Part shown: positions 2 to 38,284 of the stretch, one piece after another
Position numbering within the stretch: position 1 is the first letter of the stretch
Layout of the letters: every line of letters begins with the position of its first letter
IMG/VR virus record: IMGVR_UViG_3300045921_000730
Span: 62,001-126,000 of that record
DNA: 64,000 bases
Reading direction: 5' to 3' (one strand)
Notes under the pieces: model-generated
Seen by the model: the letters and a program-made list of their open reading frames with translations, nothing else
Database searches by the model: none
What the model was told of the DNA's origin: nothing
Made by a program: the position numbers and the translations under genes

Positions 2-997
2 ACATCTTGGTTAAAAGAAATACCAGCACAATGTTTACAACAGAAGTGTCAAGATTTGTCACAAGCATTAAAACAGTCTTTTAAGACAAATAAAAGCAAA
101 AAGGGATTTCCAAAATTTAAGTCAAAAAAGACTGATGAATCTGGCATCAGATTCCCATCATTCAAATTTGAGGGTGACAGGATCAAGTTACCTAAAATGT
201 CACAAGGAATCAAAATTAAGTTACATCGTGATTTGCTTGGGAAGAAATCATCAGTTACTATATTTCGAGATAAAACCGGAGTCTTCTGGGCATCTATACT
301 TGTTTCTATTGATGATGTTGTCCCAACGAACACTATTTCTAATGTGGTAGGTATTGATGTCGGATTAAAAGAATTCGCGGTCACATCAGACGCTGAAATA
401 ATCAAAAACCCGAAATTTCTAAAAAGAACGGCAAAGAAACTAGCAAAAGCTCAAGCAAAACATAGTAGAAAAGAAAAAGGTTCGTCAAACAAAGAAAAAC
501 AAAGAATTAAAGTTGCAAAAATTTACAGAAAAATAAGCAATCAACGTAAAGATTTTATCAATCAAGTTGCTAGTTCGATAGGCAAGACAAACGACTTGAT
601 TGTAGTTGAAAATCTCAATGTAAAAGGTATGATGAAAAATCCTAACCTAGCTAAATCTATTTCAGATGTTAGTTGGGGAATGTTTTTATCCGCTTTAAAG
701 TGGCATTGTAAGAAACGGGGCAAACACTTCGTTGAGATTTCACAATGGTATCCTTCAAGCAAAATGTGTTCATGTTGTGGAAATAAAAAATCAGATTTGT
801 CCTTGAGCGACAGAACATACGAATGTAAAGAATGTGGTTTCACGATGGATAGAGATTTAAATGCTGCCATTAACATTCTGAAAGAAGGTATCAACCTTTT
901 CAATACCGTAGGAACTACGGAAATTAACGCCTGTGGAGATATGAGTTCTGAAGTAGGGAACTCAGCCCAGGAAGCTAGTTGTTCTTTAGACAACTAG
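2..997 (+). CDS. tnpB: TnpB RNA-guided endonuclease (IS200/IS605 superfamily, family 1), 5'-truncated by the window edge
   Basis: RuvC-I GIDVG, RuvC-II VVENL, Zn ribbon CSCC...CKEC, RuvC-III DRDLNAAINI; the frame stays open back to position 2. Confidence 0.95.
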   Translation, partial: TSWLKEIPAQCLQQKCQDLSQALKQSFKTNKSKKGFPKFKSKKTDESGIRFPSFKFEGDRIKLPKMSQGIKIKLHRDLLGKKSSVTIFRDKTGVFWASILVSIDDVVPTNTISNVVGIDVGLKEFAVTSDAEIIKNPKFLKRTAKKLAKAQAKHSRKEKGSSNKEKQRIKVAKIYRKISNQRKDFINQVASSIGKTNDLIVVENLNVKGMMKNPNLAKSISDVSWGMFLSALKWHCKKRGKHFVEISQWYPSSKMCSCCGNKKSDLSLSDRTYECKECGFTMDRDLNAAINILKEGINLFNTVGTTEINACGDMSSEVGNSAQEASCSLDN

Positions 998-1005
998 CAG
1001 TTCAC
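845..1005 (+). ncRNA. Putative omegaRNA scaffold and element right end overlapping the tnpB 3' end
   Basis: Ends with hairpin GAAGCTAGTTGTTCTTTAGACAACTAGCAGTTCAC; the same 161 bp recurs with 1 mismatch at 37597-37757. Confidence 0.75.
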
Positions 1006-1023
1006 AGATAAACTGTTAAAAAA

Positions 1024-1069
1024 ATGATCTGTCGCTTGTCTGAAAAACAAGTGGGATTCGGGTGCATCT
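1024..1069 (-). mobile_element. Remnant IS200/IS605-type right end on the minus strand
   Basis: Reverse complement GATGCACCCGAATCCCACTTGTTTTTCAGACAAG..GATCAT matches GATGCACCCGAATCCCGCTTGTTCTTTAGACAAG..GTTCAG ending at 35463. Confidence 0.6.
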
Positions 1070-1108
1070 TACTAAAGAAATAATCGACGCATTGGTGAGC
1101 AATAACGG

Positions 1109-1139
1109 TTGACTGAATACTTAAAATCGACTATAAATA
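1109..1139 (+). promoter_or_regulatory. Promoter for tmRNA: sigma70-like TTGACT-N17-TATAAA overlapping a T4-type late motif TATAAATA
   Basis: TTGACT at 1109-1114, TATAAATA at 1132-1139. Confidence 0.65.
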
Positions 1140-1144
1140 TATAT

Positions 1145-1412
1145 GTTAGTGAGTAATCACTGACAATGAGTGTATGAAGCAATCTGTAGACGGGCAAGAC
1201 ACGAGTTCGAATCTCGTCGCCTCCACAAATATTAACTCATGGGGGCGTTATGGAATCGATTGACGGGCGAAGGAAAGTGGACACTTCGAGAGACGACTGA
1301 CGTAATCAGCGTAAAACCTTAAATGCAAACGATGCATTTTATAATGAGGAATTCCGCCTAGCAGCGTAAACCTCAGGGGGAGCGTAGATTCCTTCTTACC
1401 CAACATCTACCG
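1145..1412 (+). ncRNA. ssrA: Circularly permuted (two-piece) tmRNA
   Basis: T-arm ACGAG-TTCGAAT-CTCGT (1201-1217) and acceptor 3' strand CGCCTCC-A (1218-1225) precede the 5' strand GGGGGCG (1241-1247), giving a G3:U70 pair; tag ORF 1325-1369 encodes ANDAFYNEEFRLAA*. Confidence 0.92.
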
Positions 1413-1446
1413 AAAGGACAGTCTTAAGACTGTCCTTTTTGTTTTT
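1413..1446 (+). terminator. Rho-independent terminator after tmRNA
   Basis: AAAGGACAGTC-TTAA-GACTGTCCTTT followed by a T-run. Confidence 0.85.
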
Positions 1447-1451
1447 ATCAT

Positions 1452-1654
1452 CTTCAGGGCTGAGAAAACCACGTGATCTTCAGTCGCGTGGATGAATCAG
1501 CCCATTGGTATCTAATTAATTTGTAGTCATAAATAGTAATGTCTGGTTGTGGGACGCAGTCGGACTCTAAACAAAAACCGAAGGAGGCGCCGGTGATGTT
1601 AGCTGGGTCGATGAGTTCGGAAACCGCGTTGTCTTTAGCTACGCGGTAGTTCAT
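1452..1654 (+). mobile_element. ORF-less IS200/IS605-type mini-element (left-end hairpin, omegaRNA-like segment, right end)
   Basis: Left end GGGCTGA-GAAAACC..GGATGAA-TCAGCCC; right end AAACCGCGTTGTCTTTAGCTACGCGGTAGTT(CAT), shared with the right end finishing at 11424; left boundary approximate. Confidence 0.7.
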
Positions 1655-1746
1655 TTTAAATTTTTCTCTCTTAATGAAACCCATTTCCGCATATTAAAAG
1701 CAGATATTATTTTCAGCTGTAAATACTCAAAAAAAGGAGTGTTAAA

Positions 1747-2457
1747 ATGAATAAAAATAATGTTTACGTTGAAAACGATGATGATGATGTAAAGAATCCT
1801 TTACCCTTAGTAGTAAAACAAAAATACGCTTACAAATCTTTTGAGCAAACGTTTACAGCACACCAAATTCATTTTTACATTACAGATGATATCGGTGAAC
1901 CGAGCGACTATGTTGAAATGATCCACCGCATTCTAACAGCGTCTCAAAACGATGTTATTTTTATTCATTTAAATACGGCTGGTGGAAGATTAGATACAGG
2001 AATTCAAATTATTAATGCAATGCAAAATTCACAAGCAAAAATTATTACTGTATTAGAATCAATGGCTCATTCTTTAGGAACTTTAATATTCTTGGCGGGA
2101 GATGAAATGGTTGTTCATGATCATTGCATGATGATGTTCCATAATTATCGTGGAGGAGTTATTGGTAAGGGTCATGAGCAAGCAGCAGAAATCAACGCTA
2201 CAACTAAATGGTATACTTCAATTGCAAAGAAAATTTATATACCTTTCATGACAGAAGAGGAAGTTGACAGAATTATGAAAGGCGAAGATATTTGGATGCA
2301 TTCACCCGAAATTCGTAGAAGACTTGACAAAATGATTAGGGATATGGAAACACCAAAGAGTGAAGGTATTGGTAAACAAACACCAACAAAAAAAGCAACT
2401 AGACGGCAAAAACAAAAACCAACAAAACAACCCGCAGTTGATAATTTGTCTGAATAA
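1747..2457 (+). CDS. clpP: ClpP-like serine protease
   Basis: HLNTAGG, AHSLG (catalytic Ser), MMMFH (catalytic His); basic/low-complexity C-tail; GGAG SD. Confidence 0.85.
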   Translation: MNKNNVYVENDDDDVKNPLPLVVKQKYAYKSFEQTFTAHQIHFYITDDIGEPSDYVEMIHRILTASQNDVIFIHLNTAGGRLDTGIQIINAMQNSQAKIITVLESMAHSLGTLIFLAGDEMVVHDHCMMMFHNYRGGVIGKGHEQAAEINATTKWYTSIAKKIYIPFMTEEEVDRIMKGEDIWMHSPEIRRRLDKMIRDMETPKSEGIGKQTPTKKATRRQKQKPTKQPAVDNLSE

Positions 2458-2467
2458 TAGTATATTA

Positions 2468-3824
2468 TTAGAAGCAAAACTGAAATTGTATATATAGATT
2501 ATAACCAATATAAAAATAATTTCTAAGAATGATCACCTACAAACTTCCAATTCAGCTAGCTGATGAAGAAAAGAAGATGATCCTTGAATTCCAAAGGATC
2601 CAATCTTCAATGATTCGCACTGCTTACAAACAAGCTGAATTTGGTTGTACCGAAATTTCTGTAAGACAGGAAATTCGAGATAGGTTCAAAAGTCAGCTTG
2701 ATTCCTGGTTCCAACAATCGGCGGTCAAATGTGGGATCGGAATGTTCAAGTCGGAACATGAAACAAATAAATCTGGTCGAATCTTTGGTGGCAAAGGCAA
2801 TCTGATTAGACGTGCAAAGGGACTTATTTCAAAAGAAGAATGGAAACAACGACGGCTTCTTCCGTTGTATCTAATTGGTGAAGCTCCTATCAAAGGCAAT
2901 CGCAAGTTCGAGTTCCACGAGGATCATGTCATTTTTAAGCCATTCAAAGGGACAAAGATCAAGATTGATCTTCCATCAATGAGGAAGAACTGGTCAAAGA
3001 TTTGGAAACAACTCTTGGTCATGGTTTCAGAAAAACAATTACCAATCACAGTCTCTCTAACTACTGATTCCATTTCCTTTTCTTTTGATGATGTTAAGGT
3101 AAAACAAGAGATCAGAAAGATTCCAAAGCCAATCAAGAATAGATATGCAGGCATTGATCTGAACCCAAATTATATTGGCATCTCGGTTTTTGATGGAACA
3201 AAGTTGATTGAAACCAAGATGTTCTCGTTGAAGTCATTGACTGGAAAACATGCCAGTTCATCAAAACTTGAACACGAAACAAGAGAAATCGGACATGCAA
3301 TAGGTAAGTGGCTTCAACATCTACGAGTTGATAAGCTATTTGTCGAAAAACTTGAATTCAAACAGGGTGACAAAGGTATTGGTAAAAACTTTAATCGCTT
3401 AACACAGAACCAATGGAAGAAAATAACTTTAAGGTCAATTCTAGCCAAATACTTCAAGTTATATGAAATCAATGCAGCATATTCCTCAACCATAGGAAAC
3501 ATTCTGCATCCCGAATTACCAGACCCGATAGCCGCAAGTACTGAGATTGCACAACGAGGCTACCGGCTTGTGATACTCAAGAACAAACAGTTCTATCCAA
3601 AACTACCAGCAATAAAGTATCTAGAGGACCTATGGAAGGAAACCAAGATACCTTTGGTCAATAACTGGAAAGAACTACATTCTTGGGTCAAAAACTCGAA
3701 ATTGAAATATCGAGTTCCGGTTCCAGACGAATCGGTTTTTAGAATTTTTCAGTCACCAGCTAGTTTGGTTGGTGTTCTATAGATTTGTATTGCTTATATG
3801 AATTTATAAGGAAAATTTATTTTA
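2468..3824 (+). mobile_element. TnpB-only element, family 2, copy 1
   Basis: Ends shared with 57797-59148 and 24880-25140: begins (TT)AGAAGCAAAACTGAA after ATATTA, ends GGAAAATTTATTTTA. Confidence 0.85.
2529..3782 (+). CDS. tnpB: TnpB-like nuclease lacking the Cys zinc ribbon (family 2)
   Basis: AGIDLNP (RuvC-I), FVEKL (RuvC-II), NAAYSSTIG...PDPIAASTEIAQRG (RuvC-III region). Confidence 0.8.
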   Translation: MITYKLPIQLADEEKKMILEFQRIQSSMIRTAYKQAEFGCTEISVRQEIRDRFKSQLDSWFQQSAVKCGIGMFKSEHETNKSGRIFGGKGNLIRRAKGLISKEEWKQRRLLPLYLIGEAPIKGNRKFEFHEDHVIFKPFKGTKIKIDLPSMRKNWSKIWKQLLVMVSEKQLPITVSLTTDSISFSFDDVKVKQEIRKIPKPIKNRYAGIDLNPNYIGISVFDGTKLIETKMFSLKSLTGKHASSSKLEHETREIGHAIGKWLQHLRVDKLFVEKLEFKQGDKGIGKNFNRLTQNQWKKITLRSILAKYFKLYEINAAYSSTIGNILHPELPDPIAASTEIAQRGYRLVILKNKQFYPKLPAIKYLEDLWKETKIPLVNNWKELHSWVKNSKLKYRVPVPDESVFRIFQSPASLVGVL

Positions 3825-3843
3825 CACAAACAATCAAATAGTT

Positions 3844-4848
3844 ATGGAATATACATCTCTCGAAAACATTATTAAGCAGCACGTTTACCTTCCTTCACAA
3901 AGAAAAAATGGGTGGCATCCCGTTCTTTGTAAGATATGCAACGACCATGGCAAAAAAGGTAAACGTGCTGCATTTAAATTTGAAAACAATACAATAGGTT
4001 ATAACTGTTTTAATTGCGGACACACTGCTTTATATGATCCTTCTGTTCATCAAATAATACCAAAAAACATGGTGCAAGTATTGACTGCTTTCGGTATAGA
4101 AGAACATGAATGGAAACAATGTTTGTTGGAAAACTTAAAAAAACATCCAGAGTTTTCTAAGCAAAAACAAAAAGAAATAGATTATAACCCAACAGAAATA
4201 CAACTACCAGAGTTCTTTGTAGAACTAAAAAACGATACAAATGAGTGGTCGCAATATGCAATTGAATATTTAAAAAATCAAAGAGGAATTAATTATAAAG
4301 ATTATCCTTTTTACATTTGCAATAACATAACGAATAACCCTTTATCGAAAAAATGGTACGGAAGATTAATTATTCCAATTTATAAAGATAATAAAATAAT
4401 TTTTTATCAGGGAAGAGATTTATCAAATAAGCGAAAAACAAAATATCTTTCACCAAATGTAGAACGAAGTAAAGTACTATATGGTTTTGACCATTTATTG
4501 ACAAATGAACATTTACCACTATATATTTGCGAAGGGTTCTTTGATGCATTCTTATTGAATGGCGTTGCTGTATTTGGTAGAAAAATTTCCAAAGAACAAA
4601 TTTTTTGGATTAATAAATCACCAAGAAAAAAAGTTGTCGTACCTGATCGTTTTGGTGATAATAGCGATCAATTTGCTGAACAAGCACTAAAACTTGGTTG
4701 GGGCGTAAGTACTCCTGATATTGGGGACGCAAAAGATGTAAGCGAAGCGTTTATGAAATATGGGAAAATATATACACTGCAATCAATAAAAGAAAACACA
4801 CACGAAGGTCTTTTAGCACAAATTAAAACAAAATTTTATTGTGAATAA
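3844..4848 (+). CDS. DNA primase (T4 gp61-like)
   Basis: N-terminal CKIC..CFNC Zn finger; YQGR; TOPRIM ICEGFFDA; PD and KDVSE motifs. Confidence 0.88.
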   Translation: MEYTSLENIIKQHVYLPSQRKNGWHPVLCKICNDHGKKGKRAAFKFENNTIGYNCFNCGHTALYDPSVHQIIPKNMVQVLTAFGIEEHEWKQCLLENLKKHPEFSKQKQKEIDYNPTEIQLPEFFVELKNDTNEWSQYAIEYLKNQRGINYKDYPFYICNNITNNPLSKKWYGRLIIPIYKDNKIIFYQGRDLSNKRKTKYLSPNVERSKVLYGFDHLLTNEHLPLYICEGFFDAFLLNGVAVFGRKISKEQIFWINKSPRKKVVVPDRFGDNSDQFAEQALKLGWGVSTPDIGDAKDVSEAFMKYGKIYTLQSIKENTHEGLLAQIKTKFYCE

Positions 4849-4856
4849 AAAATATA

Positions 4857-5069
4857 ATGACAGAAGAAAATGAACAAATTCGTGCCGATAAATGGTGCAA
4901 TATGTCTCTTAATGAGTTGAACAAACAACGCGATATTTTGCTTCAAAAGATATCGATGTTATCGACGCTTGGAATTAATTCTTCACCAACGATCAACGCT
5001 CTATATAAAGCGCACCAACAAGCATACGATCATTTAAACGAAATTATTGATAATCGATTCAAAACATGA
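4857..5069 (+). CDS. Hypothetical protein
   Basis: 70-aa ORF with an ATGA overlap to the next gene. Confidence 0.6.
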   Translation: MTEENEQIRADKWCNMSLNELNKQRDILLQKISMLSTLGINSSPTINALYKAHQQAYDHLNEIIDNRFKT

Positions 5070-6880
5070 AAAACAAATCTTATACCGGAAAAGATATTGT
5101 CGAACTTACGGACAGAGAGCACGTTCGTTTAAGAACACAAGTTTATCTTGGAAATATGCATCCAACTTTATTTAATATTCCAAAGTTGGATAGTGATAAA
5201 CTTGAAATAGAAAGTGTTGAATTTGTACCAGCCGTTTATAAAGCAGTTGGAGAAATTATTGATAATTCAATCGACGAATTTGCTCAAATAAAAAATTCTA
5301 CTAAAACATTAACAATTGATTGTGAACCAGAAAACGGGAAATATACGATCAATGATACTGGTCGCGGCATTCCAATTGACCGACGACCCGATGGAACATA
5401 CACGCCAGAAATTGCTTTAAGTCGGTTGCGTGCAGGAAGAAACTTTAAGAACGAAAAAGAAGTTGGTGTAATTGGTATGAATGGTGTTGGTGCTGCTTGC
5501 ACTAACTATTGTTCTACAAAGTTTAAGGTAATTGTAAAGAGAGATAATCAAACATATACACAAACGTTTGAGGATGGTGCTCTCAAAATTTCTGAGCCTT
5601 CTTTAAGACAAACAAAGTCTGATAAAACAGGGACAGAAATTAGTTTCGAACTTGACAAAAGAGTTTTTAAAGATGTTTATATACCTTTTTCGGTAATGAA
5701 AAACAGAGCAATTGAAATTGCTTTAACAAATCCGGACGTTTCTGTAATTTTTAATGGTGAAAAAATAAAATATAAAAACGGATTCAAAGAATATCTTGAT
5801 AAAATTGCACCAGAAAAATATTTTCCTTTTTCTATTAAAACAGAAAACGTGCAAGGAACATTTTATGTAATTACTGACTGCATTGAAAACATTGATGAAC
5901 AAATGTTTACGTGGGTGAATAGTTCTTATCTGTTTGATGGTGGCAAGTGTAACACTCAATTTGTAAACGCGTTCTTCGAAAAGACAATTTCACATCTACA
6001 AAACGCTGCAAAAAAGAACAAGAGTGATATTACAAGGAATGATGTAAGAGAAAATCTTGTTGTATTTGCTAACTTAAAAATTAAAAATCCCGAATATGAT
6101 TCACAATCCAAAACAAGGTTAACAGGACCTGATTTACGAAAAGAAATCAATGAAGCAATTGATTCTCAGTGGAAAAATTTTGTTCGTAAAAATAATCCTT
6201 GGCTTGATGTTGTGCTTGAGCGAGCAATTCAACGACATCACACACAAGCAAACAAAAAAGCAATTGAAGAACATCAAAAACAATTAAAAAAGCGTGTTCC
6301 TGGATTACTTGATGCAACAAGTCAAATTCGTTCCGAGTGCCAGTTGTTGATCACTGAAGGAATGTGCTTGGATGAACGCACACCCATTAAAATTCTTAGC
6401 TCAGAAGGATTGGTTGATATACCTTTAAAAAATGTAAATATTGGTGATACTGTTATAACACACAAAAACAACTTAAAACCAATAACTAATATAACAAGGA
6501 CTCTAAAACGAGGAACTCGTATTACTACATCTATTGGGCAGGTCGTGTGTAGTGATCAACATCGATGGTTAGTGTACGATACTATTACACATAAATTTGA
6601 TTGGGCGCCCACAAATGCATTAAATGCCAATGTACATAAATTAGTAAGAAGCCGGTTAGGTGATTGGGTATATTGTGCAGAATTTGTAATAGAAAATAAC
6701 AAGGACGCAGATAATATTGTATATCCACGTGTAATAATAACCGCTTTTGAAAAAATTAAAACATCATTGACCCATACGTTTATTGTGTTGGATACTGACA
6801 CATACGCAGTCGTGGAAATTCCATTCTCTGAATTGGATCCTTCACACCACCTAATGCTGTTGTTTAAATCAAAAAAATAA
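5066..6880 (+). CDS. Type II topoisomerase large subunit N-part (GyrB/gp39-like ATPase) fused to the N-half of a split intein
   Basis: EIIDNSIDE, DTGRGIP, GMNGVG; TOPRIM start LITEGM followed by intein block A CLDERT. Confidence 0.92.
   Translation: MKNKSYTGKDIVELTDREHVRLRTQVYLGNMHPTLFNIPKLDSDKLEIESVEFVPAVYKAVGEIIDNSIDEFAQIKNSTKTLTIDCEPENGKYTINDTGRGIPIDRRPDGTYTPEIALSRLRAGRNFKNEKEVGVIGMNGVGAACTNYCSTKFKVIVKRDNQTYTQTFEDGALKISEPSLRQTKSDKTGTEISFELDKRVFKDVYIPFSVMKNRAIEIALTNPDVSVIFNGEKIKYKNGFKEYLDKIAPEKYFPFSIKTENVQGTFYVITDCIENIDEQMFTWVNSSYLFDGGKCNTQFVNAFFEKTISHLQNAAKKNKSDITRNDVRENLVVFANLKIKNPEYDSQSKTRLTGPDLRKEINEAIDSQWKNFVRKNNPWLDVVLERAIQRHHTQANKKAIEEHQKQLKKRVPGLLDATSQIRSECQLLITEGMCLDERTPIKILSSEGLVDIPLKNVNIGDTVITHKNNLKPITNITRTLKRGTRITTSIGQVVCSDQHRWLVYDTITHKFDWAPTNALNANVHKLVRSRLGDWVYCAEFVIENNKDADNIVYPRVIITAFEKIKTSLTHTFIVLDTDTYAVVEIPFSELDPSHHLMLLFKSKK
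6365..6880 (+). other. Split intein N-fragment (IntN, 171 aa)
   Basis: Cys1 at residue 434 (CLDERTPI..IGDTVITH), block B CSDQHRW; ends in a stop with no C-terminal intein motifs. Confidence 0.85.
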
Positions 6881-6887
6881 CAATTTT

Positions 6888-6929: not shown

Positions 6930-6933
6930 CGAA

Positions 6934-10889: not shown

Positions 10890-11296
10890 TTGAAAAATTG
10901 TATTGTCGAAACAAATGAATAATGCTTAGTTGTTGGAAGTATTATATAATTATGTTGTGACAACATGGCATTACTTTCCATTGGTTTTTTGCCTGGAGAC
11001 AAAGACCATGTAATATGGTAAATCTTACCATCTTTTCTAATTGTTGTGCCCTCAACTTCAACAACCAATGCTTCAACACCATTAATGTCTTGATATCCAA
11101 CAACTACAATTGTTGGAGACCACAAGTGTTGAGGTACCTGATTGATAGCACTAGAGGGAACATCAAACTCATATGTGACGTGATGAGCAACAACACGATC
11201 ATATTTTGGCGGAAACAAATCTAACAGCTCGCTTCTGACATTGTTGGGAAGAGGATATGCAAGATATCCTTGTTTTTTAAGGTGTTGTAATTTCAT
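10886..11296 (-). CDS. 2H phosphoesterase-like protein
   Basis: Two HxT motifs (HHVTY, YHITWS). Confidence 0.65.
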   Translation of the reverse strand: MKLQHLKKQGYLAYPLPNNVRSELLDLFPPKYDRVVAHHVTYEFDVPSSAINQVPQHLWSPTIVVVGYQDINGVEALVVEVEGTTIRKDGKIYHITWSLSPGKKPMESNAMLSQHNYIILPTTKHYSFVSTIQFFN

Positions 11297-11424
11297 ATTA
11301 ATTCCCGCAAGGAAACCTGATGTTCTTTAGACGTCAGGATGAATTGCGGACCTTTCATTAGTTAAATTGAAAAATTCTAACGGAGCAGGAAAACCGCGTT
11401 GTCTTTAGCTACGCGGTAGTTTAT
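11297..11424 (+). mobile_element. ORF-less IS200/IS605-type mini-element inserted in an ATGA stop/start overlap
   Basis: Left-end hairpin GGAAACCTGATGTTCTTTAGACGTCAGGATGAA, right-end hairpin ..GCGGTAGTTTAT; removing it gives minus-strand GGA-CTA-TGA overlapping ATG-AAA. Confidence 0.8.
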
Positions 11425-17715: not shown

Positions 17716-17887
17716 AAGGGTCCTTATTTACAAATTGATTTTTTAAACCGAAAAAAATAATAATAAATCAATATATTATTCTCGTACTTTTTTAATGTTT
17801 TTTCAACTAGTTGTTTTTTTCTTAAAAAACAATTTAAAAAACCTAATGTTCTTGGACAACTAATATGTAGGAGCAATAAATTCTCTG

Positions 17888-18085
17888 TTGACTTTTACTT
17901 ACCGATATAGTAATCTATTAACGTCTTGAATAAAAATATCAAGATTTTCAATACCATAAGAATTACGGGAATTGATGTTTGTGGAGATGTGAATTCTATT
18001 GTAAAGAATTCAACCCAGAAAGTTAGTTATTCTATAGAATAACTAACAGTTGATATAATTTTCAAAGATCCGCTAAATTTAGCGG
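17888..18085. promoter_or_regulatory. Divergent intergenic control region with perfect palindromes
   Basis: TTGACT at 17888; 26-bp palindrome at 18022-18047; 16-bp palindrome at 18070-18085. Confidence 0.45.
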
Positions 18086-22627: not shown

Positions 22628-22690
22628 ATTCAAAAAAACCTGATGTTCATACAGTTACCACAATTCATCCTAGGATGAATTGTGGACCTC
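22628..22690 (+). mobile_element. Rearranged remnant of a family-1 left end
   Basis: AAAACCTGATGTTC, then palindrome CCACAATTCATCCTAGGATGAATTGTGG built from the left end's 3' half. Confidence 0.5.
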
Positions 22691-24211: not shown

Positions 24212-24895
24212 ATGTTTATTCACAAATCTGCACACCGGCCGATGGAATTAAAAACCATCGAAAATTCACAAGGACGCTTTTATATTACGCCTGATGGAAA
24301 AAAATATCCATCAATTACAACTCTGCTTAGCACAAAAGAAAAGCCCGGTTTGGTGGAGTGGAGGAACTCTTTGGGTGCTGAAGCGGCTGCTAAGGAAACA
24401 AAACGAGCTGCTGAAAGAGGAACAGCAGTTCATGCTATGTTGGAACTATTTTTAAAAAACGACACCGATCCTGTGTCAAACGTTAATAAAAATGTACCAA
24501 TATCAGTTAATCATGTCGCTGAATTTAATTCAATAAAACGATATATTCAAAAACATGTCAATAATATTGTTCTTCAAGAATCTGCTTTATATAGCGACAC
24601 ACTAAAAGTTGCAGGGCGCGTAGATTGTATTGCTGAATGGGATGGTAAATTATCTGTAATAGATTTCAAAACGTCCACAAATAACAAAAATAAACAAATT
24701 ATTGAAGATTATTTTCTTCAAACAACAGCCTATGCTTTAATGTTCGAAGAAATATATAAAGAAACAATTGAACAAGTTGTAATTATAATTTCTGTCGAAA
24801 AAGGAATTGTACCCCTGATATATAAAGAATCTGTTGATTCATATATGGAACCTCTCGTAAGAAGAATAAATACATATTACAAGAAGCAAAACTGA
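24212..24895 (+). CDS. PD-(D/E)xK (Cas4/RecB-like) exonuclease
   Basis: YPSITT, RGTAVH, AGRVDC, VIDFKTS, QxxAY. Confidence 0.85.
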   Translation: MFIHKSAHRPMELKTIENSQGRFYITPDGKKYPSITTLLSTKEKPGLVEWRNSLGAEAAAKETKRAAERGTAVHAMLELFLKNDTDPVSNVNKNVPISVNHVAEFNSIKRYIQKHVNNIVLQESALYSDTLKVAGRVDCIAEWDGKLSVIDFKTSTNNKNKQIIEDYFLQTTAYALMFEEIYKETIEQVVIIISVEKGIVPLIYKESVDSYMEPLVRRINTYYKKQN

Positions 24896-25140
24896 AGAAC
24901 AAACAGTTCTATCCAAAACTACCAGTAGTATCGTATCTAGAGGACCTATGGAAGGAAACCGAGATACATTTGGTGGAAACATGGAAAGAATTGCATTCTT
25001 GGGTCAAAAACTCGAAATTGAAATATCGAGTTCCGATTCCAGATGAATCGGTTTTCAGAATTTTCCAGTCGCCAGCTAGTTTGGTTGGTGTTCTATAGAT
25101 TTGTATTACTTATATGAATTTATATGGAAAATTTATTTTA
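24880..25140 (+). mobile_element. ORF-less mini-derivative of TnpB family 2
   Basis: Left end AGAAGCAAAACTGAA fused to the last ~245 bp of the element; follows ATATTA. Confidence 0.88.
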
Positions 25141-29374: not shown

Positions 29375-29407
29375 ACTGAATTTACAAAAATACTAGAATG
29401 TTCTCAT

Positions 29408-31024
29408 TTAAAGATTTGGATTCTCCCAAACTAATTTAATTTTCCCACAGTCCCAAATTCTGAAAAAACCACTATTTGCAAGCATAGCACGTTTTGAACC
29501 GTTGTTTAGTGATGATGCGGCAATTAATTGTTTTTTTGTAATAAATCTTCTATGTTTTCGTTGTTTGCCATCAGTCCACCACACAGCTGGCGGAGTTGTA
29601 TATAATTTTTTAAACCCAATGTGATCTTTCACTAATCCCGTAAACCATCTGCGATCAACAAAAGCGACAACCTTTTCACATTGTAATTGTTTTGTAGCAT
29701 ATTTAAACATCTTTGATCCAAGCCCCGGATTATTTTGTTTATTTGTGACAAAACGTTTTAATTCTAATTCGTTGGTTCCTTCACTAGAACTTTTGCCAAA
29801 TACCATAACACCGATTAACTCTCCCGAATTGGTATATGCTCCTATTCTATAACTGCCGGGTGATCCAGCACCAAGCAAATGGTGTTTATTTAAAAAATCT
29901 TGAGCTATATTCCATTCAATTTCTTTTATGGTTACGTTTCTAGCATAAACGCCTTTTGGTGACTTATTCAAAAGATGTCTCAATGTGTCTTTGCATTGTT
30001 GTTGCATGTTAAACCACTCATCTTCAAATATTTGAATTAAACGAATCCCTTTGCTTTCACACGCTTCGGTTTTTTTCAAATGATAACGAGCATCTTTCCC
30101 TGCAGCTTCACTGTGCCAGTATAGTCCATTATATTCTATAGCCAGATTATAATCTGGCAAAAATATGTCAAGCTCTATTGGATATATCATGGTTCTATTA
30201 TTGATTGTTATATTTTCAACGCCAAGCGATTTCAAAAATTCAACGATTTGATGTTGCCCAATTGAGCTGTAATATTTAATCGGTGTTATGCCATGTTTGC
30301 GTAAATAATTTATCACTGTAGTATCCCATATGCCTAACTCTTCAGCTATAATGGGGATGGATTTTTTGTTAACTATATGTTGTGTGTGCAACCAATTTTT
30401 ATCATTTAATAATGCAAGAGATTCATTAGGAATATGTTGTTGTGACCAATATTGTTTCCCATAACGGATTTCGTTAGTAATTTTTATTTTATTTTTAACT
30501 TCGTCTGTTTGTGATGGGTGTGGGACTCCATATTTTTCTAACGATCGTTGAATTTTAAGTTGTTGAACATATGGTAGCTGCGATGGATTGGTTACGTTCT
30601 GTAACGCAAAAGATTGTTTAATTTTTTCACGACCTAAAGATGAAACCAAAAAATTTGTGTGTCCATACTTTTCGCGGTTGGTATTTTGACGTTTGATCAA
30701 AATAGCCTTTTTATCAATGCAGGATAACGTTTTTTTCGTTTTGGATTTTGTAACCTCAGATAATCTTGCACAACGATTGCTGCAAAATTTGTTGTATTGT
30801 TTCTTTGCAACATTCCAATTAGTTTGCTTGCCGCATTCACACGTTGGAATAGATTTGATGTCATTTAACACAAGCCAAATAAGATTTCTAATGTTAATAA
30901 CGTTGATCCCAAGACTTTTGTAATGTATAATACCCATATTAAAGGTTTCTTGTTCTGTTAAAGGAATACGTTTTGGCATTTTATCTTTGTATTGCAAACA
31001 TAATTTCAGTAATTTATCGTTCAT
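29408..31024 (-). CDS. Free-standing putative homing endonuclease inserted antisense between polymerase halves
   Basis: CECG..FCSNRC, KYG repeats, ELDIFLP..AIEYNGLYWH, IFEDEW, IWDCG; TATAAATA on the minus strand at 31051-31058. Confidence 0.75.
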   Translation of the reverse strand: MNDKLLKLCLQYKDKMPKRIPLTEQETFNMGIIHYKSLGINVINIRNLIWLVLNDIKSIPTCECGKQTNWNVAKKQYNKFCSNRCARLSEVTKSKTKKTLSCIDKKAILIKRQNTNREKYGHTNFLVSSLGREKIKQSFALQNVTNPSQLPYVQQLKIQRSLEKYGVPHPSQTDEVKNKIKITNEIRYGKQYWSQQHIPNESLALLNDKNWLHTQHIVNKKSIPIIAEELGIWDTTVINYLRKHGITPIKYYSSIGQHQIVEFLKSLGVENITINNRTMIYPIELDIFLPDYNLAIEYNGLYWHSEAAGKDARYHLKKTEACESKGIRLIQIFEDEWFNMQQQCKDTLRHLLNKSPKGVYARNVTIKEIEWNIAQDFLNKHHLLGAGSPGSYRIGAYTNSGELIGVMVFGKSSSEGTNELELKRFVTNKQNNPGLGSKMFKYATKQLQCEKVVAFVDRRWFTGLVKDHIGFKKLYTTPPAVWWTDGKQRKHRRFITKKQLIAASSLNNGSKRAMLANSGFFRIWDCGKIKLVWENPNL

Positions 31025-31080
31025 ATATAATTCCTTCGTGGGTGTATATATATTTATATTATAACATATGGGAGTAATAA

Positions 31081-31200
31081 ATGCAAGTTAGAGAAGGTAT
31101 AGAAATGTCTGATGAAGATGCAGCTTTATATGATAAACACAAAGCTGCAATTGAATATTATGACAGATTACAATATGTTTACAAAATTAAATTAAACTCT
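31081..31200 (+). CDS. DNA polymerase C-terminal gene, exon 1 (missing from the ORF track)
   Basis: GGAG SD; MQVREG...QYVYKIKLNS is the first half of motif B. Confidence 0.85.
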
Positions 31201-31420
31201 TGACATACAAGGAGCTCATATTAGGAATAATATGATGAAAACTGGGTGAATTCAGGAAAACCCCACGTGGGCAATCCTGAGCCAAGCACAGACTACAGTT
31301 TGTGAAGGTGCAGAGACTACTGGAGAGGTAAAGTCCTCTTAATAACCAGACATAGCGCCCAGCAACCAGACCGGTTGATGATATAGTCCGACACCACCAG
31401 CAATGGTGGATTACAGTAAG
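31201..31420 (+). ncRNA. Group I intron (220 nt, no ORF) in polymerase motif B
   Basis: 5' exon ends in U and intron ends in G; core elements GAATTCAGGAAA, GCAATCCTGAGCCAAG, GCAGAGACT, GATATAGTCC; splicing restores KLNS|LYG in frame. Confidence 0.92.
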
Positions 31421-32485
31421 TTGTATGGTGCATTAACAAACCTCTATTTTCGTTTTTATGATTTACGAATGGGTGAGTCCACTACGGGCACGGGACGAAT
31501 GATTCTGCGGCACCAATGTCGTAAAGTAAGCGAAATACTTGATGGAAAATATGAAGTAGATTTTCCGCTGTACGAAAGCGTAAAAGAAACAGTTGAATCG
31601 GGCGTCGAACAAAAATATGCTCTTGAAGGCGAACTGTTCAAAGAACAATTTATGTCTGAAAGTGTGATATATGGCGATACCGACAGCACATACTTTAAAA
31701 CGCACGCAAAAAACAAAGAAGAAGCTGTAACAATTGCTGATAGTGTTGCCGAAAAAGTAAATTCTTCTTATAAAGAATTTATGCAAAAAACATTCCTGTG
31801 TAATTCCGGCTTTGATGACATCATTAAGTGTGGTCGCGAAATTGTAAGCGATCGAGGTATATTTGTTGATAAGAAACGCTATATCCTTCACATCGTTGAT
31901 AAAGAAGGAAAAGCAACTGACAGTATGAAGGTAATGGGTCTTGACACAAAGAAAACAACACTTCCAAAAGAAGTGACAGAAAAATTAAATAATTTTATAG
32001 AACTATACTTGAAAGGCATGTCTTGGGATGAAATTGCTGATAAAATTGTTGCTTACAAAGATGAACTAAGGAATACAAACGATCTTATGATTATTGGTTT
32101 ACCAAAAGGTGTTCAAAAAGTAGAAGAATATACATCCGACTTTCAAAATTACGGAGACAAAGCAAGATTACCAGGACACGTTGCAGCTGCTATTCATTAT
32201 AATCAATGTCTTAAAGCGTTTAACGATAAAGAAAGCGTGCCAATTATTTCTGGAATGAAAATTAAAGTTTTTTATTTAACAAAATCATATGGTAAATTTA
32301 AGAGTATTGCATTACCAACCGATATTGAAGTAATACCTGATTGGTTTACTAAAAATTTTACAGTTGATATTGAAGCTCACATAGAACGATTAGTTGATAA
32401 TCCTCTACAAAATATCTTGAAAGCAATTGGTAAAAAAACACCAACCAGACATGATATATTTGTTGATTCGGCATTTGAATTCTAA
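31421..32485 (+). CDS. DNA polymerase C-terminal gene, exon 2
   Basis: LYG, YGDTDS (motif C), KKRY, KVMGLD. Confidence 0.92.
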   Translation: MYGALTNLYFRFYDLRMGESTTGTGRMILRHQCRKVSEILDGKYEVDFPLYESVKETVESGVEQKYALEGELFKEQFMSESVIYGDTDSTYFKTHAKNKEEAVTIADSVAEKVNSSYKEFMQKTFLCNSGFDDIIKCGREIVSDRGIFVDKKRYILHIVDKEGKATDSMKVMGLDTKKTTLPKEVTEKLNNFIELYLKGMSWDEIADKIVAYKDELRNTNDLMIIGLPKGVQKVEEYTSDFQNYGDKARLPGHVAAAIHYNQCLKAFNDKESVPIISGMKIKVFYLTKSYGKFKSIALPTDIEVIPDWFTKNFTVDIEAHIERLVDNPLQNILKAIGKKTPTRHDIFVDSAFEF

Positions 32486-32486
32486 C

Positions 32487-33305: not shown

Positions 33306-33356
33306 TTTATTTCCACGATTTGTAATATAATACATCTATATCTTTTGGAGAAAAAT

Positions 33357-34064: not shown

Positions 34065-34067
34065 TTT

Positions 34068-35392: not shown

Positions 35393-35463
35393 ACTACTGC
35401 AAAACTGAAGATTTCCTTGATGCACCCGAATCCCGCTTGTTCTTTAGACAAGTAGTAGTTCAG
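35389..35463. mobile_element. Back-to-back right-end remnants, each supplying the TGA of a convergent gene
   Basis: GTGAACTAC (minus-strand right end) holds the RNase H stop; GTAGTTCAG (plus-strand right end) holds the stop of ORF 35460-35915. Confidence 0.7.
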
Positions 35464-35915: not shown

Positions 35916-35951
35916 ATTATTTTCCTTAGTATTATTCGTTATTTATTAGAT

Positions 35952-35959
35952 TATAAATA
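35952..35959 (+). promoter_or_regulatory. T4-type late promoter
   Basis: TATAAATA 20 bp upstream of the PAAR gene. Confidence 0.6.
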
Positions 35960-35979
35960 AAAAATAAGGAGATAATAAC

Positions 35980-37044
35980 ATGCCAGGATCTTTACGTACA
36001 ACAGACAAAATTAGTTGTGGTGATGTTACAGGGAAAGGAAGTAACAATGTTTATATTAACAACCGTTCTTCTTTTCGTGCTTTCCGTGATTTGACAGCAG
36101 GTCATTGTTTTACACCAACAAGAATAACTTCAGGATCGCCAAACGTATTTGTGAACAATTCACAAATGGCAAGAATAGGTGATTCCATATTTACACACTG
36201 CTGTGGTTCTACCTGCCATTCTGGTGTTGCATCCACGGGTTCTAATGATGTGTTTGCTAATGAGCCGGGCTCTCCGCCTTCTGGAAGGCCTCCGGCAAGA
36301 GAAGTTATTTTACAGCAAATTGATAACTTTAAACAACCAACCGCATCAAGAACCGTTGCAGCAGACACATTTGTAGATGATGATGAAGCACCTGATATAG
36401 GTCCATCAGATCCAAGGTATGTTGCTTATAAGTCTGTCGTTGATCGTGAAATAAATGTTGAACGAACACAAGAAATAACAAACACAGTTGTATATCCTCC
36501 ATCGATACCAAATCAAACAGTTTTTGCCGATTGTTCAGACATCATAGAAAGAGAAGGAACTTTTCCGTTGTCGTTTCCATTATCACCAAATTATACGCTC
36601 GGAAATCTATTAAATTGTCGTGTTAGTAAATATCCACTACGTCCGAACGCTGGTCTTACAGAAAAACAAATCGTTTGTAACTTACGAGCGGTATGTTTAA
36701 ATATTCTGGAACCGCTTTTGCAAGAATATGATACCAATATGGTAATTAATTCCGGCTTTAGAATAGGAACCGGCACATCTCAACACTTAAAAGGACAGGC
36801 CGTTGATATTGCTTTCCCATCAATTGAAACCAACGCCGACAAAATGTTTGAGAGAGCTACAGAAATTACATCAAAGATTGCTTATGATCAGTTTATATAC
36901 GAGCTTGGTATTACCACATTTTGGATTCATTTATCATTTAACCAAAGTCAGTCGACGATTCTTCCAGCAAATAAAGTTCTTACAAAGCCTCGACTTCCAG
37001 TAAACGACCGCCAATATTTAAAAGGGATTGTTTACGTTAAATAA
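35980..37044 (+). CDS. PAAR-like spike-tip domain fused to an M15 Zn peptidase
   Basis: N-terminal GSNNVYIN/GSPNVFVN..MARIGD..HCC..H..GSNDVFAN; C-terminal SGFR, SQHLKGQAVD, WIHLS. Confidence 0.8.
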   Translation: MPGSLRTTDKISCGDVTGKGSNNVYINNRSSFRAFRDLTAGHCFTPTRITSGSPNVFVNNSQMARIGDSIFTHCCGSTCHSGVASTGSNDVFANEPGSPPSGRPPAREVILQQIDNFKQPTASRTVAADTFVDDDEAPDIGPSDPRYVAYKSVVDREINVERTQEITNTVVYPPSIPNQTVFADCSDIIEREGTFPLSFPLSPNYTLGNLLNCRVSKYPLRPNAGLTEKQIVCNLRAVCLNILEPLLQEYDTNMVINSGFRIGTGTSQHLKGQAVDIAFPSIETNADKMFERATEITSKIAYDQFIYELGITTFWIHLSFNQSQSTILPANKVLTKPRLPVNDRQYLKGIVYVK

Positions 37045-37128
37045 CCCTTTTAAAAGGTATCTCCATAATTTTTCATAGTAAATACTTGGACTTCTCAATA
37101 AACCTATTGAAAACAAGGAGTATTTAAA

Positions 37129-37518
37129 ATGTCTGAACAATTTGCTTATAATTTTCAAAAATCACCACAATTCCCAAGCATTGAATGGATTGATCTACGA
37201 GGCGACGGTGTTTTGCACGAATGTGCGATTCTTAAACAAGATGCTGTCGGAAATAAATTATTTTTTCAAGTAAACCATCTCGATAAGATTGATAAGGAAC
37301 GTCTTGGAGGCATTCTTGCTGACCGAAACGCTCGTTCTCTTGAGCTTTGGGATTTAATGAGCCAAAAAACACTTGGCAATGGAATGAACGCATTAGCATA
37401 TTTCCATCAATATGTTAAGATTCTTGCTCCAAACGGAAAAATTATTGATCCTAAGTCTGGTTTAATGGGTGCACCTATTACTGGTTCAATAAAGGCTACA
37501 GCAGCACCAACCGAATAA
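37129..37518 (+). CDS. Hypothetical protein
   Basis: 129-aa ORF, AGGAG SD. Confidence 0.7.
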   Translation: MSEQFAYNFQKSPQFPSIEWIDLRGDGVLHECAILKQDAVGNKLFFQVNHLDKIDKERLGGILADRNARSLELWDLMSQKTLGNGMNALAYFHQYVKILAPNGKIIDPKSGLMGAPITGSIKATAAPTE

Positions 37519-37527
37519 TATCGTTAT

Positions 37528-37757
37528 ATAATCAATTCAAGAAAACCTGATGTTCTTTAGACGTCAGGATGAATTGAATTGATTTTTGAAATAGACATGG
37601 ATAGAGATTTAAATGCTGCCATTAACATTCTGAAAGAAGGTATCAACCTTTTCAATACCGTAGGAACTACGGAAATTAACGCCTGTGGAGATATGAGTTC
37701 TGAAGTAAGGAACTCAGCCCAGGAAGCTAGTTGTTCTTTAGACAACTAGCAGTTCAC
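37528..37757 (+). mobile_element. Internally deleted family-1 TnpB element (left end, omegaRNA region, right end)
   Basis: Left-end hairpin shared with 11297; 37597-37757 matches 845-1005; the right-end TCA is the stop of ORF 37754-38284. Confidence 0.9.
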
Positions 37758-38284
37758 TTTTCCACATATCCCAGTTGTAAGAGTTGAGTCCACAAAAATT
37801 GTGGACTCACATTTTTTTCCGGTAAGTTATATACTCTTGCAACAAACTCAGAACATATTTCTGTTCCAACATTAAACTTAGGCAACTTAATTCTAAAAGC
37901 GTTCCAAAATAAATCAACCAAACCAACATATATTGCTTCACACAACCCATATTTTACTTTACCGACTCTTTCGAGAGCAATGTCCTCAACGTTAGACCAC
38001 TTTGTTGGAGCTTTTATAATTGAAAATTTTTTATTCTCATAATATGACAAATTAAGTATTCTTCGTTTTGAGCCTTTTTGTGCTTCAACCAACAACCATC
38101 GTACATCTTTATTTTTAGTTTTATGACAAAAACAAATAAAAACGTGCGAAAATTGTGAACGAGTTACTAACATTATAATTGCAGAAATGATTGACTTTCG
38201 TGAACCGTGAACAAAAACAATATCGCCATCACAAACGATATCTCTCAATTCTTCATACGAATATTCTTTAGTTGGTCTCAACAT
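37754..38284 (-). CDS. Permuted papain-like (YiiX/YaeF, NlpC/P60-related) amidase
   Basis: GDIVF, FSHV (His), Y, ICSEFVA (Cys). Confidence 0.8.
   Translation of the reverse strand: MLRPTKEYSYEELRDIVCDGDIVFVHGSRKSIISAIIMLVTRSQFSHVFICFCHKTKNKDVRWLLVEAQKGSKRRILNLSYYENKKFSIIKAPTKWSNVEDIALERVGKVKYGLCEAIYVGLVDLFWNAFRIKLPKFNVGTEICSEFVARVYNLPEKNVSPQFLWTQLLQLGYVEK

What the first reader, a model, noticed from the sequence alone, without database searches (positions are those of the whole stretch)
845..37777. Dispersed ORF-less omegaRNA cassettes: a possible distributed guide repertoire for phage TnpBs
Seen: mini-elements at 37528-37757, 24880-25140 and 1452-1654 lack a nuclease ORF. Where a parent is visible, they keep the left end plus the 3' segment (161 bp for family 1, ~245 bp for family 2). 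Each has a different downstream flank. Established: TnpB omegaRNA is encoded at the element 3' end and the flank is the guide. Inference: these cassettes could load intact TnpBs in trans, each guiding cleavage of the matching empty site in co-infecting relatives. That would give CRISPR-like homing or competition without an array. The guide after 37757 is also antisense to the neighbouring mRNA 3' end.
Basis: partly seen in the sequence, partly recalled or inferred. Interest (0 to 1): 0.75.

Follow-up and report, generated by a model that had tools for sequence, protein, structure and literature searches.

The report
ORF-less TnpB guide-RNA mini-transposons in phage
A hot-spring jumbo phage is littered with cut-down transposons that have lost their nuclease gene but kept the guide-RNA part; this is a known kind of element (PATE/MITE derivatives of TnpB insertion sequences) caught here with natural filled and empty sites, so it is a good test bed rather than a new mechanism.

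Summary
The three mini-elements exist almost exactly where stated: 37528-37757, 24880-25138 and 1449-1654. Each keeps the 3' segment of a nuclease-encoding parent and has a unique right flank.

They are internally deleted, ORF-less derivatives of TnpB-only insertion sequences. Families 1 and 3 are IS200/IS605-type. Family 2 is an IS607-type element whose 417-aa nuclease is a zinc-finger-less TnpB/Cas12-fold protein.

The window lies in a 244-kb jumbo-phage contig. That contig has 7 canonical TnpB genes, 3 family-2 genes, about 16 ORF-less copies with a full scaffold, and several hairpin-only remnants. It has no TnpA.

The retained segments fold well and show compensatory base changes. A contig in a run filed under the same sample as the filled allele lacks both the family-3 mini and a full family-2 element, precisely and without scar. 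This fixes the borders and the TAM (TTAT|; ATATTA|).

Trans use of such guide RNAs by TnpB, and homing into co-infecting phages, are plausible. Both ideas are already in the literature (Meers 2023 on PATEs; a 2026 review). No RNA data could be obtained. A CRISPR-like weapon role is unsupported, and the antisense feature follows from gene geometry.

Verdict: new member of a known kind, moderate interest.

The parts
1..1005 (+). Family-1 parent element (IS200/IS605-type, TnpB only). It starts 335 nt before the window. The TnpB ORF ends at 997 and the right end at 1005 (..CAGTTCAC). The predicted guide is 1006-1021.
   Evidence: Pfam OrfB_IS605 + Cas12f1-like_TNB. NCBIfam guided_TnpB 4e-84. Ends.
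1449..1654 (+). Family-3 ORF-less mini-element: left-end hairpin, 35-nt linker and 122-nt right-end scaffold. TAM TTAT at 1445-1448. Predicted guide 1655-1670.
   Evidence: 10 full copies in the genome. An empty-site contig joins 1446 to 1653 with 2-nt ambiguity. Consensus fold.
2468..3822 (+). Family-2 full-length element A (IS607-type). The 417-aa zinc-finger-less TnpB-fold nuclease is at 2529-3782. It is preceded by ATATTA (2462-2467).
   Evidence: The empty-site contig joins 2467 to 3823. AF2 model pLDDT 88 matches Cas12f/Cas12k/TnpB/Fanzor2. D210/E273/D332 are invariant.
11297..11424 (+). Tiny element with a left-end hairpin plus only about 40 nt of the family-3 right-end hairpin. It has no scaffold. 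It is preceded by TCAT.
   Evidence: (D4).
17837..18054 (+). Old family-1-like ORF-less mini. The right-end scaffold 17894-18054 is 63% identical to family 1, with 5 compensated pairs. The left end is degenerate and its start is uncertain.
   Evidence: (D3, D5).
24880..25138 (+). Family-2 ORF-less remnant: 16 nt of left end plus 243 nt of the 3' segment. It is preceded by ATATTA. It supplies the last 4 codons and the stop of the PD-(D/E)XK gene (24212-24895), and it abuts the next gene, whose likely start is at 25156.
   Evidence: (D1).
35432..35463 (+). Right-end hairpin remnant of another TnpB family. No left end and no scaffold.
37528..37757 (+). Family-1 ORF-less mini-element: a left-end stretch of about 51 nt identical to the parent's, 16 unrelated nt, and the 161-nt right-end scaffold. 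TAM TTAT at 37524-37527. Predicted guide 37758-37773, which is antisense to the last codons of the convergent gene 37754-38284.
57797..59146 (+). Family-2 full-length element B (ORF 57853-59106). It is inserted after ATATTA inside a phrog_3339 homing-endonuclease gene copy.
   Evidence: (D2, D6).
22634..22690 (+). Left-end-like remnant.
   Evidence: (D5).
60157..60215 (+). Left-end-like remnant, preceded by TCAT.
   Evidence: (D4).

Best explanation
These are non-autonomous insertion sequences and their internally deleted, ORF-less derivatives (PATE/MITE-like) living in a jumbo phage from hot-spring microbial mats.

Families 1 and 3 are IS200/IS605-type TnpB-only elements. They insert 3' of a TTAT (or TCAT) motif without target duplication, have subterminal hairpins at both ends, and end in GTTCAT or GTTCAC. 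Family 2 is an IS607-type element with a zinc-finger-less TnpB-fold nuclease. It inserts after ATATTA.

Shown here: the deletions removed the nuclease gene but kept the 118-245 nt at the right end, which is where TnpB-family guide RNA is encoded.

Inferred steps:
1. The minis are transcribed, mostly by read-through from co-oriented neighbouring genes.
2. The scaffold is bound in trans by the cognate TnpB made by the intact copies.
3. The 16-20 nt right flank then guides cleavage of the same site when it is empty (TAM + flank), whether after excision or in a co-infecting genome that lacks the insertion.
4. Recombinational repair copies the mini back in, giving retention or homing.

New insertions need a TnpA (a Y1 transposase or a serine recombinase) supplied from outside the sequenced contig, probably by the host or another element. 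The system is best seen as selfish. Any harm to competitor phages would be a side effect.
For: Identity of the nucleases: (canonical TnpB). For family 2, (fold and catalytic triad; homologues sit next to IS607-type serine recombinases, including ISCaje4 of phage CP220).

Parent-mini relations.

Exact, scarless presence/absence: the 6475-nt X5 contig lacks 1447-1652 and 2468-3822, while X1, filed under the same sample, has both.

Copy number: 10 family-3 minis sharing one deletion junction.

RNA structure: z-scores of -3.4 and -4.2. Covariation. In the ORF-less copies there is an invariant 19-nt core and a conserved 5' scaffold, against a variable linker and left end.

Orientation: 15 of 18 scaffold-bearing minis are co-oriented with the downstream gene.

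Literature: omegaRNA works in trans (10.1101/2023.11.20.567912). PATEs encoding omegaRNAs have been described (PMC10055086).
Against: - No transcript data; no RNA run was listed.
- No TnpA of either type is in the 244-kb contig, which is about 72% complete, nor in five related viral records. How the copies spread is therefore not shown.
- Family-3 covariation is weak by the count of double changes (79/1000 shuffles reach it). Part of it lies in the terminal hairpin, which TnpA also needs as DNA.
- The family-1 and family-2 minis are single copies, 92-99% identical to their parents. Their intact scaffolds may only reflect recency.
- Hairpin-only minis and remnants exist, so scaffold retention is not obligatory.
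- The right-end terminus TTCAT differs from the TAM TTAT by one base, and some copies have TCAT as left flank. Discrimination between filled and empty sites by TnpB is assumed, not shown.
Confidence: 0.65

Rival explanations
1. Inert debris. The minis are decaying deletion products, or MITEs moved only by TnpA. The right-end segment is kept only because the deletions were recent, or because the ends are needed as DNA for transposition. No guide RNA is made or used.
For: Elements occur in every state of decay: full minis, a hairpin-only mini, and solo ends. The family-1 and family-2 minis are nearly identical to their parents. The family-2 mini has lost its left end. Family-3 covariation is weak. 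There are no RNA data.
Against: In the ORF-less family-3 copies, the scaffold core and 5' part are far more conserved than the linker and left end, yet TnpA does not need them. The internal stem CCGG/CTGG changes to TCGA/TCGA among mini copies that share one deletion junction. The old mini at 17894-18054 keeps its pairing at 63% identity. Several independent deletion derivatives (families 1, 2 and 3, the family-2 copy with an internal deletion at genome 169798-170565, and the old mini ending at 18054) all keep the 3' part.
Confidence: 0.25
2. Phage weapon. The dispersed cassettes are maintained for the phage's benefit as an array-less, CRISPR-like repertoire that destroys or converts competing relatives during co-infection.
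For: About 26 guide-bearing units with distinct flanks lie in one genome. An empty-site strain occurs in a run filed under the same sample as the filled strain. Homing endonucleases of phages are known to exclude competitors (review PMC13565253).
Against: The guides are fixed by the insertion site and there is no acquisition machinery. The targets are AT-rich intergenic or gene-end sites, not conserved essential sequence. The copy landscape is that of selfish transposons. Nearer relatives G001 and G002 lack TnpB altogether. No test of fitness was possible.
Confidence: 0.12
3. Regulatory by-products. The minis act mainly as cis elements for neighbouring genes, as terminators, antisense RNA or stop-codon donors, rather than as guide RNAs.
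For: The right-end hairpin scores as terminator-like, and a second + strand terminator-like hairpin lies 28 nt beyond 37757. The minis supply stop codons to the 24212-24895 and 37754-38284 genes. The guide region is antisense to the 37754-38284 mRNA.
Against: These effects follow from where a TTAT/ATATTA-targeting element can land. The reverse complement of TTAT contains TAA, and the predicted empty site gives the same protein end, VEK*. They do not explain the conserved internal scaffold.
Confidence: 0.05

Closest known systems
PATEs / MITE-like derivatives of IS200/IS605 elements that encode omegaRNA (Geobacillus stearothermophilus ISGst PATEs, Meers et al. 2023, PMC10055086; the C. difficile IStron-end PATE, 10.1101/2023.11.20.567912)
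   Same: They have no ORF, but both transposon ends and the right-end guide-RNA region are kept. They are multi-copy, depend on TnpA and TnpB supplied in trans, and insert next to a TAM without target duplication.
   Different: Here they sit in a jumbo phage rather than a bacterial chromosome. No TnpA is in the sequenced genome. Three or more families coexist. A natural empty-site strain occurs in a run filed under the same sample.
IS1341-type TnpB-only IS200/IS605 elements with omegaRNA (ISDra2 TnpB, Karvelis et al. 2021, PMC8612924)
   Same: Families 1 and 3 have TnpB with OrfB_IS605 and zinc-finger domains, a structured 3' RNA region overlapping the ORF end, a T-rich 4-5 nt TAM on the left, and a guide equal to the right flank.
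   Different: No tnpA partner. TAM TTAT/TCAT. About 41-45% identity to the nearest cellular TnpBs.
ISCaje4 of Campylobacter phage CP220 and IS607-family TnpB elements (also CboIStron TnpB)
   Same: The family-2 nuclease is about 35% identical to ISCaje4 'TnpB'. A 60% identical homologue directly follows an IS607-type serine recombinase. There is no target duplication, and a structured 3' region is present.
   Different: The copies in this genome carry no recombinase gene and no intron. The protein lacks the zinc-finger (TNB) domain and is missed by Pfam TnpB models. No member of this clade (Pfam SSO2105_N) turned up as characterised in my searches.
Free-standing homing endonucleases of T-even phages (SegF, SegB, Mob) and 'transposon non-restorative homing' as proposed in PMC13565253
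   Same: The predicted outcome is the same: cleavage of the allele lacking the element in a co-infecting genome, followed by copying of the element.
   Different: Recognition would be by RNA guide plus TAM. For the minis, the nuclease would be encoded elsewhere in the genome. This is untested here.

Membership tests
IS200/IS605 family (families 1 and 3) | TnpB with RuvC (OrfB_IS605) and zinc-finger TNB domains in the full-length copies | tested here: met
   There are 7 copies over the Pfam cut-off with open frames of 400-455 aa.
IS200/IS605 family (families 1 and 3) | No terminal inverted repeats; subterminal hairpins at the left and right ends | tested here: met
   Hairpins CCTGATGT..ACGTCAGG / GCTAGTTG..CAACTAGC and CCACGTGA..CGCGTGG / CCGCGTTG..CTACGCGG.
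IS200/IS605 family (families 1 and 3) | Insertion 3' of a short conserved motif (TAM), no target-site duplication, scarless empty site | tested here: met
   The empty allele reads GTTTTTAT|TTTAAATTT in the X5 contig. All 11 family-3 copies are preceded by TTAT. Shown directly for one family-3 copy only.
IS200/IS605 family (families 1 and 3) | Y1 (HUH) TnpA transposase in the element or genome | tested here: not met
   No PF01797 match in the 244-kb contig at E<=1. The elements are non-autonomous. The contig is about 72% complete.
omegaRNA-encoding PATE | No protein-coding gene, both ends retained, several copies | tested here: met
   Met for family 3 with 10 copies. The family-1 mini has both ends but is a single copy. 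The family-2 mini keeps only 16 nt of left end, so for it the feature is not met.
omegaRNA-encoding PATE | Conserved RNA secondary structure in the retained right-end segment | tested here: met
   Strong for family 2, moderate for family 1 against the old mini, weak for family 3.
omegaRNA-encoding PATE | The RNA is expressed, ends in the flank, and is bound by TnpB | not testable with these tools
   No RNA run was listed. No Rfam family matched the segments.
IS607 family (family 2) | Serine-recombinase TnpA with an N-terminal HTH next to tnpB | tested here: inconclusive
   Absent from this genome. Present next to a 60% identical homologue (L102) and, truncated, in ISCaje4.
TnpB / Cas12 superfamily (family-2 nuclease) | RuvC fold with a D-E-D triad and overall TnpB-like architecture | tested here: met
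   Foldseek probability 1.0 to Cas12f, Cas12k, TnpB and Fanzor2 over about 400-470 columns, though TM is only 0.24-0.29. D210, E273 and D332 are invariant in 33 sequences.
TnpB / Cas12 superfamily (family-2 nuclease) | Zinc-finger (TNB) domain between RuvC-II and RuvC-III | tested here: not met
   No CxxC pairs in the sequence. No PF07282 or PF01385 match. Sequence profiles do not reach solved TnpB structures.
CRISPR array | Clustered direct repeats separated by acquired spacers, with adaptation genes | tested here: not met
   The units are dispersed over the genome, one guide each, fixed by the insertion site.

The most novel reading that the evidence does not exclude
A jumbo phage maintains about 26 guide-RNA units, 10 with a nuclease gene and about 16 without. 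The few nucleases use them in trans to cut every matching empty site in co-infecting relatives. The whole set would then behave as a distributed gene-drive and exclusion system between phage strains, including units served by an uncharacterised zinc-finger-less TnpB clade that is mostly viral.
Probability: 0.2. Interest if true: 0.75.

Novelty: new member of a known kind. Interest (0 to 1): 0.45.

Why it matters
RNA-guided homing by TnpB has been shown for restoring a transposon on a sister chromosome in bacteria. Homing between co-infecting phage genomes, and the use of nuclease-less guide cassettes in trans, are so far proposals.

This phage population offers a natural test. Filled and empty alleles with exact borders occur in runs filed under one sample. 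Many ORF-less copies share one deletion junction, and intact cognate nucleases are present. It also gives a handle on a large, mostly viral, zinc-finger-less TnpB clade with a well-supported 3' RNA structure, which could be a compact editor candidate. The finding does not reveal a new principle.

Tried and rejected
- Rfam at gathering and at permissive thresholds found no guide-RNA family in the segments.
- Megablast of 10 kb against deposited phages found nothing.
- Sequence and profile searches of the family-2 protein against PDB, Pfam, PHROGs and NCBIfam gave nothing usable. Only the predicted fold, and a weak TIGR01765 hit in one homologue, linked it to TnpB.
- I looked for empty sites of the family-1 and family-2 minis in relatives. 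The nearest viral contigs are only 57-68% identical at protein level, and there the 129-aa gene directly abuts the 403-aa gene. Exact-protein look-ups returned only filled alleles, or contigs broken inside the repeat.
- I tried to identify the host or a TnpA donor through the family-3 TnpB. The best cellular matches are 41-45% identical, in Clostridia and cyanobacteria.
- The 288-kb JGI contig of the same phage could not be searched.
- A serine-recombinase model with a shared 2-bp TA core does not fit the observed filled and empty junctions of family 2. I left the integration chemistry open.
- I considered that the family-2 insertion splits a homing-endonuclease gene like an intron. The element has no ribozyme, and clean removal leaves the halves out of frame.
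- I rejected the idea that the PD-(D/E)XK gene's own 3' end mimics the family-2 left end. Homologues end differently.

Full report
**Context.** The window is bases 62001-126000 of a 244,293-bp virus record, linear and about 72% complete. It is 34% G+C and occurs in hot-spring and microbial-mat metagenomes. Gene content is that of a large myovirus-like jumbo phage: baseplate, a 4134-aa virion protein, ribonucleotide reductase, DNA polymerase B, primase and ClpP. The genome also carries many selfish elements: a group I intron, homing endonucleases and probably inteins.

**Observation.** All three mini-elements are real.

Family 1. Positions 37597-37757 are 99% identical to 845-1005, the last 161 nt of a TnpB element whose ORF ends at 997. 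The stretch 37523-37578 is identical to the left end (with its TAM) of that parent, which lies just before the window.

Family 2. Positions 24891-25140 are 92-95% identical to the 3' ends of two full copies. The element is 24880-25138.

Family 3. The element is 1449-1654. Its last 118 nt are 96.6% identical to the mini. This mini is a true multi-copy element. There are ten full copies of about 210 bp with the same deletion junction, 80-98% identical to each other. There is also a further deleted copy and a diverged right end.

- an older family-1-like mini ending at 18054;
- a 128-bp element with only the two end hairpins (11297-11424);
- a solo right-end hairpin (35432-35463);
- two left-end remnants.

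Genome-wide I count about 21 ORF-less right ends against 5 attached to a TnpB gene. About 16 of the ORF-less ends keep at least 118 nt of scaffold.

**What the parents are.** Seven ORFs pass the Pfam cut-off for the TnpB zinc-finger domain. The family-1 protein matches guided_TnpB at 4e-84.

The 417-aa family-2 protein matches no Pfam, PHROG, NCBIfam or PDB sequence. It does have more than 590 homologues of about 420 aa. It belongs to an 8041-member, mostly viral cluster carrying Pfam SSO2105_N. D210, E273 and D332 are invariant. Its AlphaFold model (pLDDT 88) matches Cas12f, Cas12k, TnpB and Fanzor2 at probability 1.0. It has no zinc finger.

A 60% identical homologue directly follows an IS607-type serine recombinase in T4-like phage contigs. 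A 35% identical one is the annotated 'TnpB' of ISCaje4 in Campylobacter phage CP220, again behind a resolvase-like gene. Family 2 is therefore an IS607-type, nuclease-only element.

The genome has three full family-2 copies, one of them cut by the contig start. It also has one copy with an internal deletion, and the mini. Neither a Y1 transposase nor a serine recombinase is present in the contig. Five related viral records also lack a Y1 transposase.

**Borders and mobility.** Laying the contigs of four DNA runs on window 1-6000 gave the most useful result.

In run X5, a 6475-nt contig at depth 18 reads 976-1446, then 1653-2467, then 3823-6000. It lacks both the family-3 mini and the full family-2 element. 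In run X1, which is filed under the same sample, contigs cross all four junctions of the filled state at depth 46-60.

The empty sites read GTTTTTAT|TTTAAATTT and GTATATTA|TACACAAAC. Both insertions are therefore scarless and without target duplication.
- The family-3 element follows TTAT, as do all other family-3 copies. It ends in GTAGTTCAT.
- Family 2 follows ATATTA at all three window sites. It ends in TTTATTT followed by TA, a terminus conserved in distant relatives.

The empty-site contig has 0 differences in 976-2467 and 26 in 3823-6000. It therefore represents another strain, not an assembly error.

For the family-1 and family-2 minis no empty allele was found. Other contigs are filled or break inside the repeat.

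**Is the retained part a guide-RNA scaffold?** The evidence differs by family.

*Folding.* The 161-nt family-1 segment and the 241-nt family-2 segment fold better than shuffled sequence, with z = -3.4 and -4.2.

*Family 2.* Ten sequences, including relatives at 65-92% protein identity, give 59 consensus pairs. Of these, 15-17 carry double compensatory changes, against 6.9+-1.8 in column shuffles (0 of 1000 shuffles reach the observed value) and 2-9 in slid controls. Examples are GUAUCU/AGAUAC becoming GGGUGA/UCACCC, and CACCAG/UUGGUG becoming GGUAAA/UUUACC.

*Family 1.* The old ORF-less mini at 17894-18054 is only 63% identical, yet it keeps the pairing with 5 compensated pairs.

*Family 3.* The count of double changes is weak, 5 against 3.3 (79 of 1000 shuffles reach it). 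Among the ORF-less copies, however, the 19-nt core AAACAAAAACCGAAGGAGG is invariant. The 5' scaffold varies at 16% of columns, while linker and left end vary at 40-44%. The 16-nt flank is unrelated between copies.

A transposase needs only the end hairpins, so this pattern argues for constraint on an RNA. Recency and gene conversion cannot be excluded.

*Other checks.* No Rfam family matches. No RNA run could be listed, so expression is untested. Fifteen of 18 scaffold-bearing minis point the same way as the gene downstream. The family-1 and family-2 minis directly follow a co-oriented gene, so read-through transcription is plausible. Replication-linked insertion bias could produce the same orientation pattern.

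**The antisense remark.** The guide after 37757 does lie antisense to the last codons of the convergent gene 37754-38284. The reason is simple. The element inserted at that gene's stop codon. In the filled state the stop, TGA, comes from the right end GTTCAC. In the predicted empty site the reverse complement of the TAM gives TAA. The protein ends VEK* either way.

In the nearest relatives both this gene and the mini are absent. A + strand terminator-like hairpin lies 28 nt beyond the right end.

**Mechanism and comparison.** Identity as IS200/IS605- and IS607-type non-autonomous elements, with PATE-like derivatives, is well supported. The trans-guide step is inference. It rests on three points:
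- the scaffolds are 92-99% identical to those of intact copies in the same genome;
- published work shows TnpB works equally well with omegaRNA supplied in trans (10.1101/2023.11.20.567912, legend of Fig. S10C);
- TnpB cuts the empty donor site to restore its element (PMC10055086).

[quoted passage not shown] A 2026 review lists transposon homing into co-infected phages as a category (PMC13565253).

The stronger claim of a CRISPR-like repertoire kept for the phage's benefit has no support:
- guides are dictated by insertion sites in AT-rich intergenic or gene-end DNA;
- hairpin-only copies and solo-end remnants occur beside the scaffold-bearing minis;
- the family-2 mini has lost nearly all its left end, including a TATAGATT(T)ATA motif shared by left and right ends, and so is probably an immobile in-situ deletion.

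**Verdict.** Observation confirmed. Interpretation partly supported. New member of a known kind, with interest of about 0.45. The value lies in the natural filled/empty polymorphism, the many ORF-less copies, and the uncharacterised zinc-finger-less nuclease clade with a well-supported 3' RNA.

Noticed in passing
window 1118-1441 (+): A permuted (two-piece) tmRNA gene encoded by the phage. It scores 121 bits against tmRNA_permuted and 108 against beta_tmRNA. Its terminator T-run runs into the TTAT used by the family-3 mini.
   Followed up: no
window 27698-32485: DNA polymerase B is split into 27698-29374 and 31403-32485. Between the halves lie a group I intron (31189-31410, Rfam 85.8 bits) and a reverse-oriented 537-aa phrog_3339 homing endonuclease (29408-31024).
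   Followed up: partly
window 56878-59786: A second phrog_3339 homing-endonuclease copy carries the family-2 element. After clean removal of the element the two halves are in different frames, with the frame change apparently just upstream of the insertion. The gene may already have been broken, or it may be expressed in two pieces.
   Followed up: partly
window 12009-17294 (-): A 1761-aa ribonucleotide reductase large subunit. The reductase match covers only residues about 1130-1760, and an endonuclease-like stretch lies at 244-430. This suggests one or more inteins or a fusion.
   Followed up: no
window 2529-3782 and 57853-59106: The family-2 nuclease belongs to a large, mostly viral clade (Pfam SSO2105_N; cluster of 8041 members) with a TnpB/Cas12 fold and an invariant D-E-D triad, but no zinc finger. 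Current Pfam TnpB models miss it. Its 3' RNA structure has strong covariation.
   Followed up: partly
L113, L116, L117, L122 (other viral contigs): Several family-2 relatives match only the C-terminal half or third of the protein and keep the conserved right end. L113 and L116 appear to lie inside their contigs, while L117 and L122 start at the contig edge, so truncation there is not shown. This hints that 5'-truncated, 3'-retaining derivatives recur. I did not check for frameshifts or split alignments.
   Followed up: no
genome 233139-233306 (L097 1540-1707): A further-deleted family-3 mini lies in inverted orientation against the 5' end of the family-3 parent TnpB gene. The parent therefore appears to have 124-bp inverted right ends and no recognisable left end of its own.
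   Followed up: no
genome 1-1166 (L101): The contig begins inside a family-2 copy, so the assembly probably broke at this repeat. Logan contigs also break inside the minis (L107, L108, L110).
   Followed up: partly
window 37754-38284 (-): A 176-aa gene with a weak C92 peptidase match, present here but absent between the conserved neighbours in related phages L001 and L003. The family-1 mini sits exactly at its stop codon. A + strand terminator-like hairpin (37785-37809) lies inside its last codons.
   Followed up: partly
window 1649-1654, 11293-11296, 60157-60160: The right-end terminus (TTCAT, TTTAT) is one base from, or includes, the left-flank motif (TTAT). Two remnants have TCAT as left flank. 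How the nuclease would tell a filled site from an empty one is not obvious.
   Followed up: no
window 1401-1800 and 3601-3800: Summed contig depth over the family-3 mini is about 16-20 times the single-copy level, and about 10 times over the family-2 right end. This suggests more copies in the community than the contig shows.
   Followed up: no
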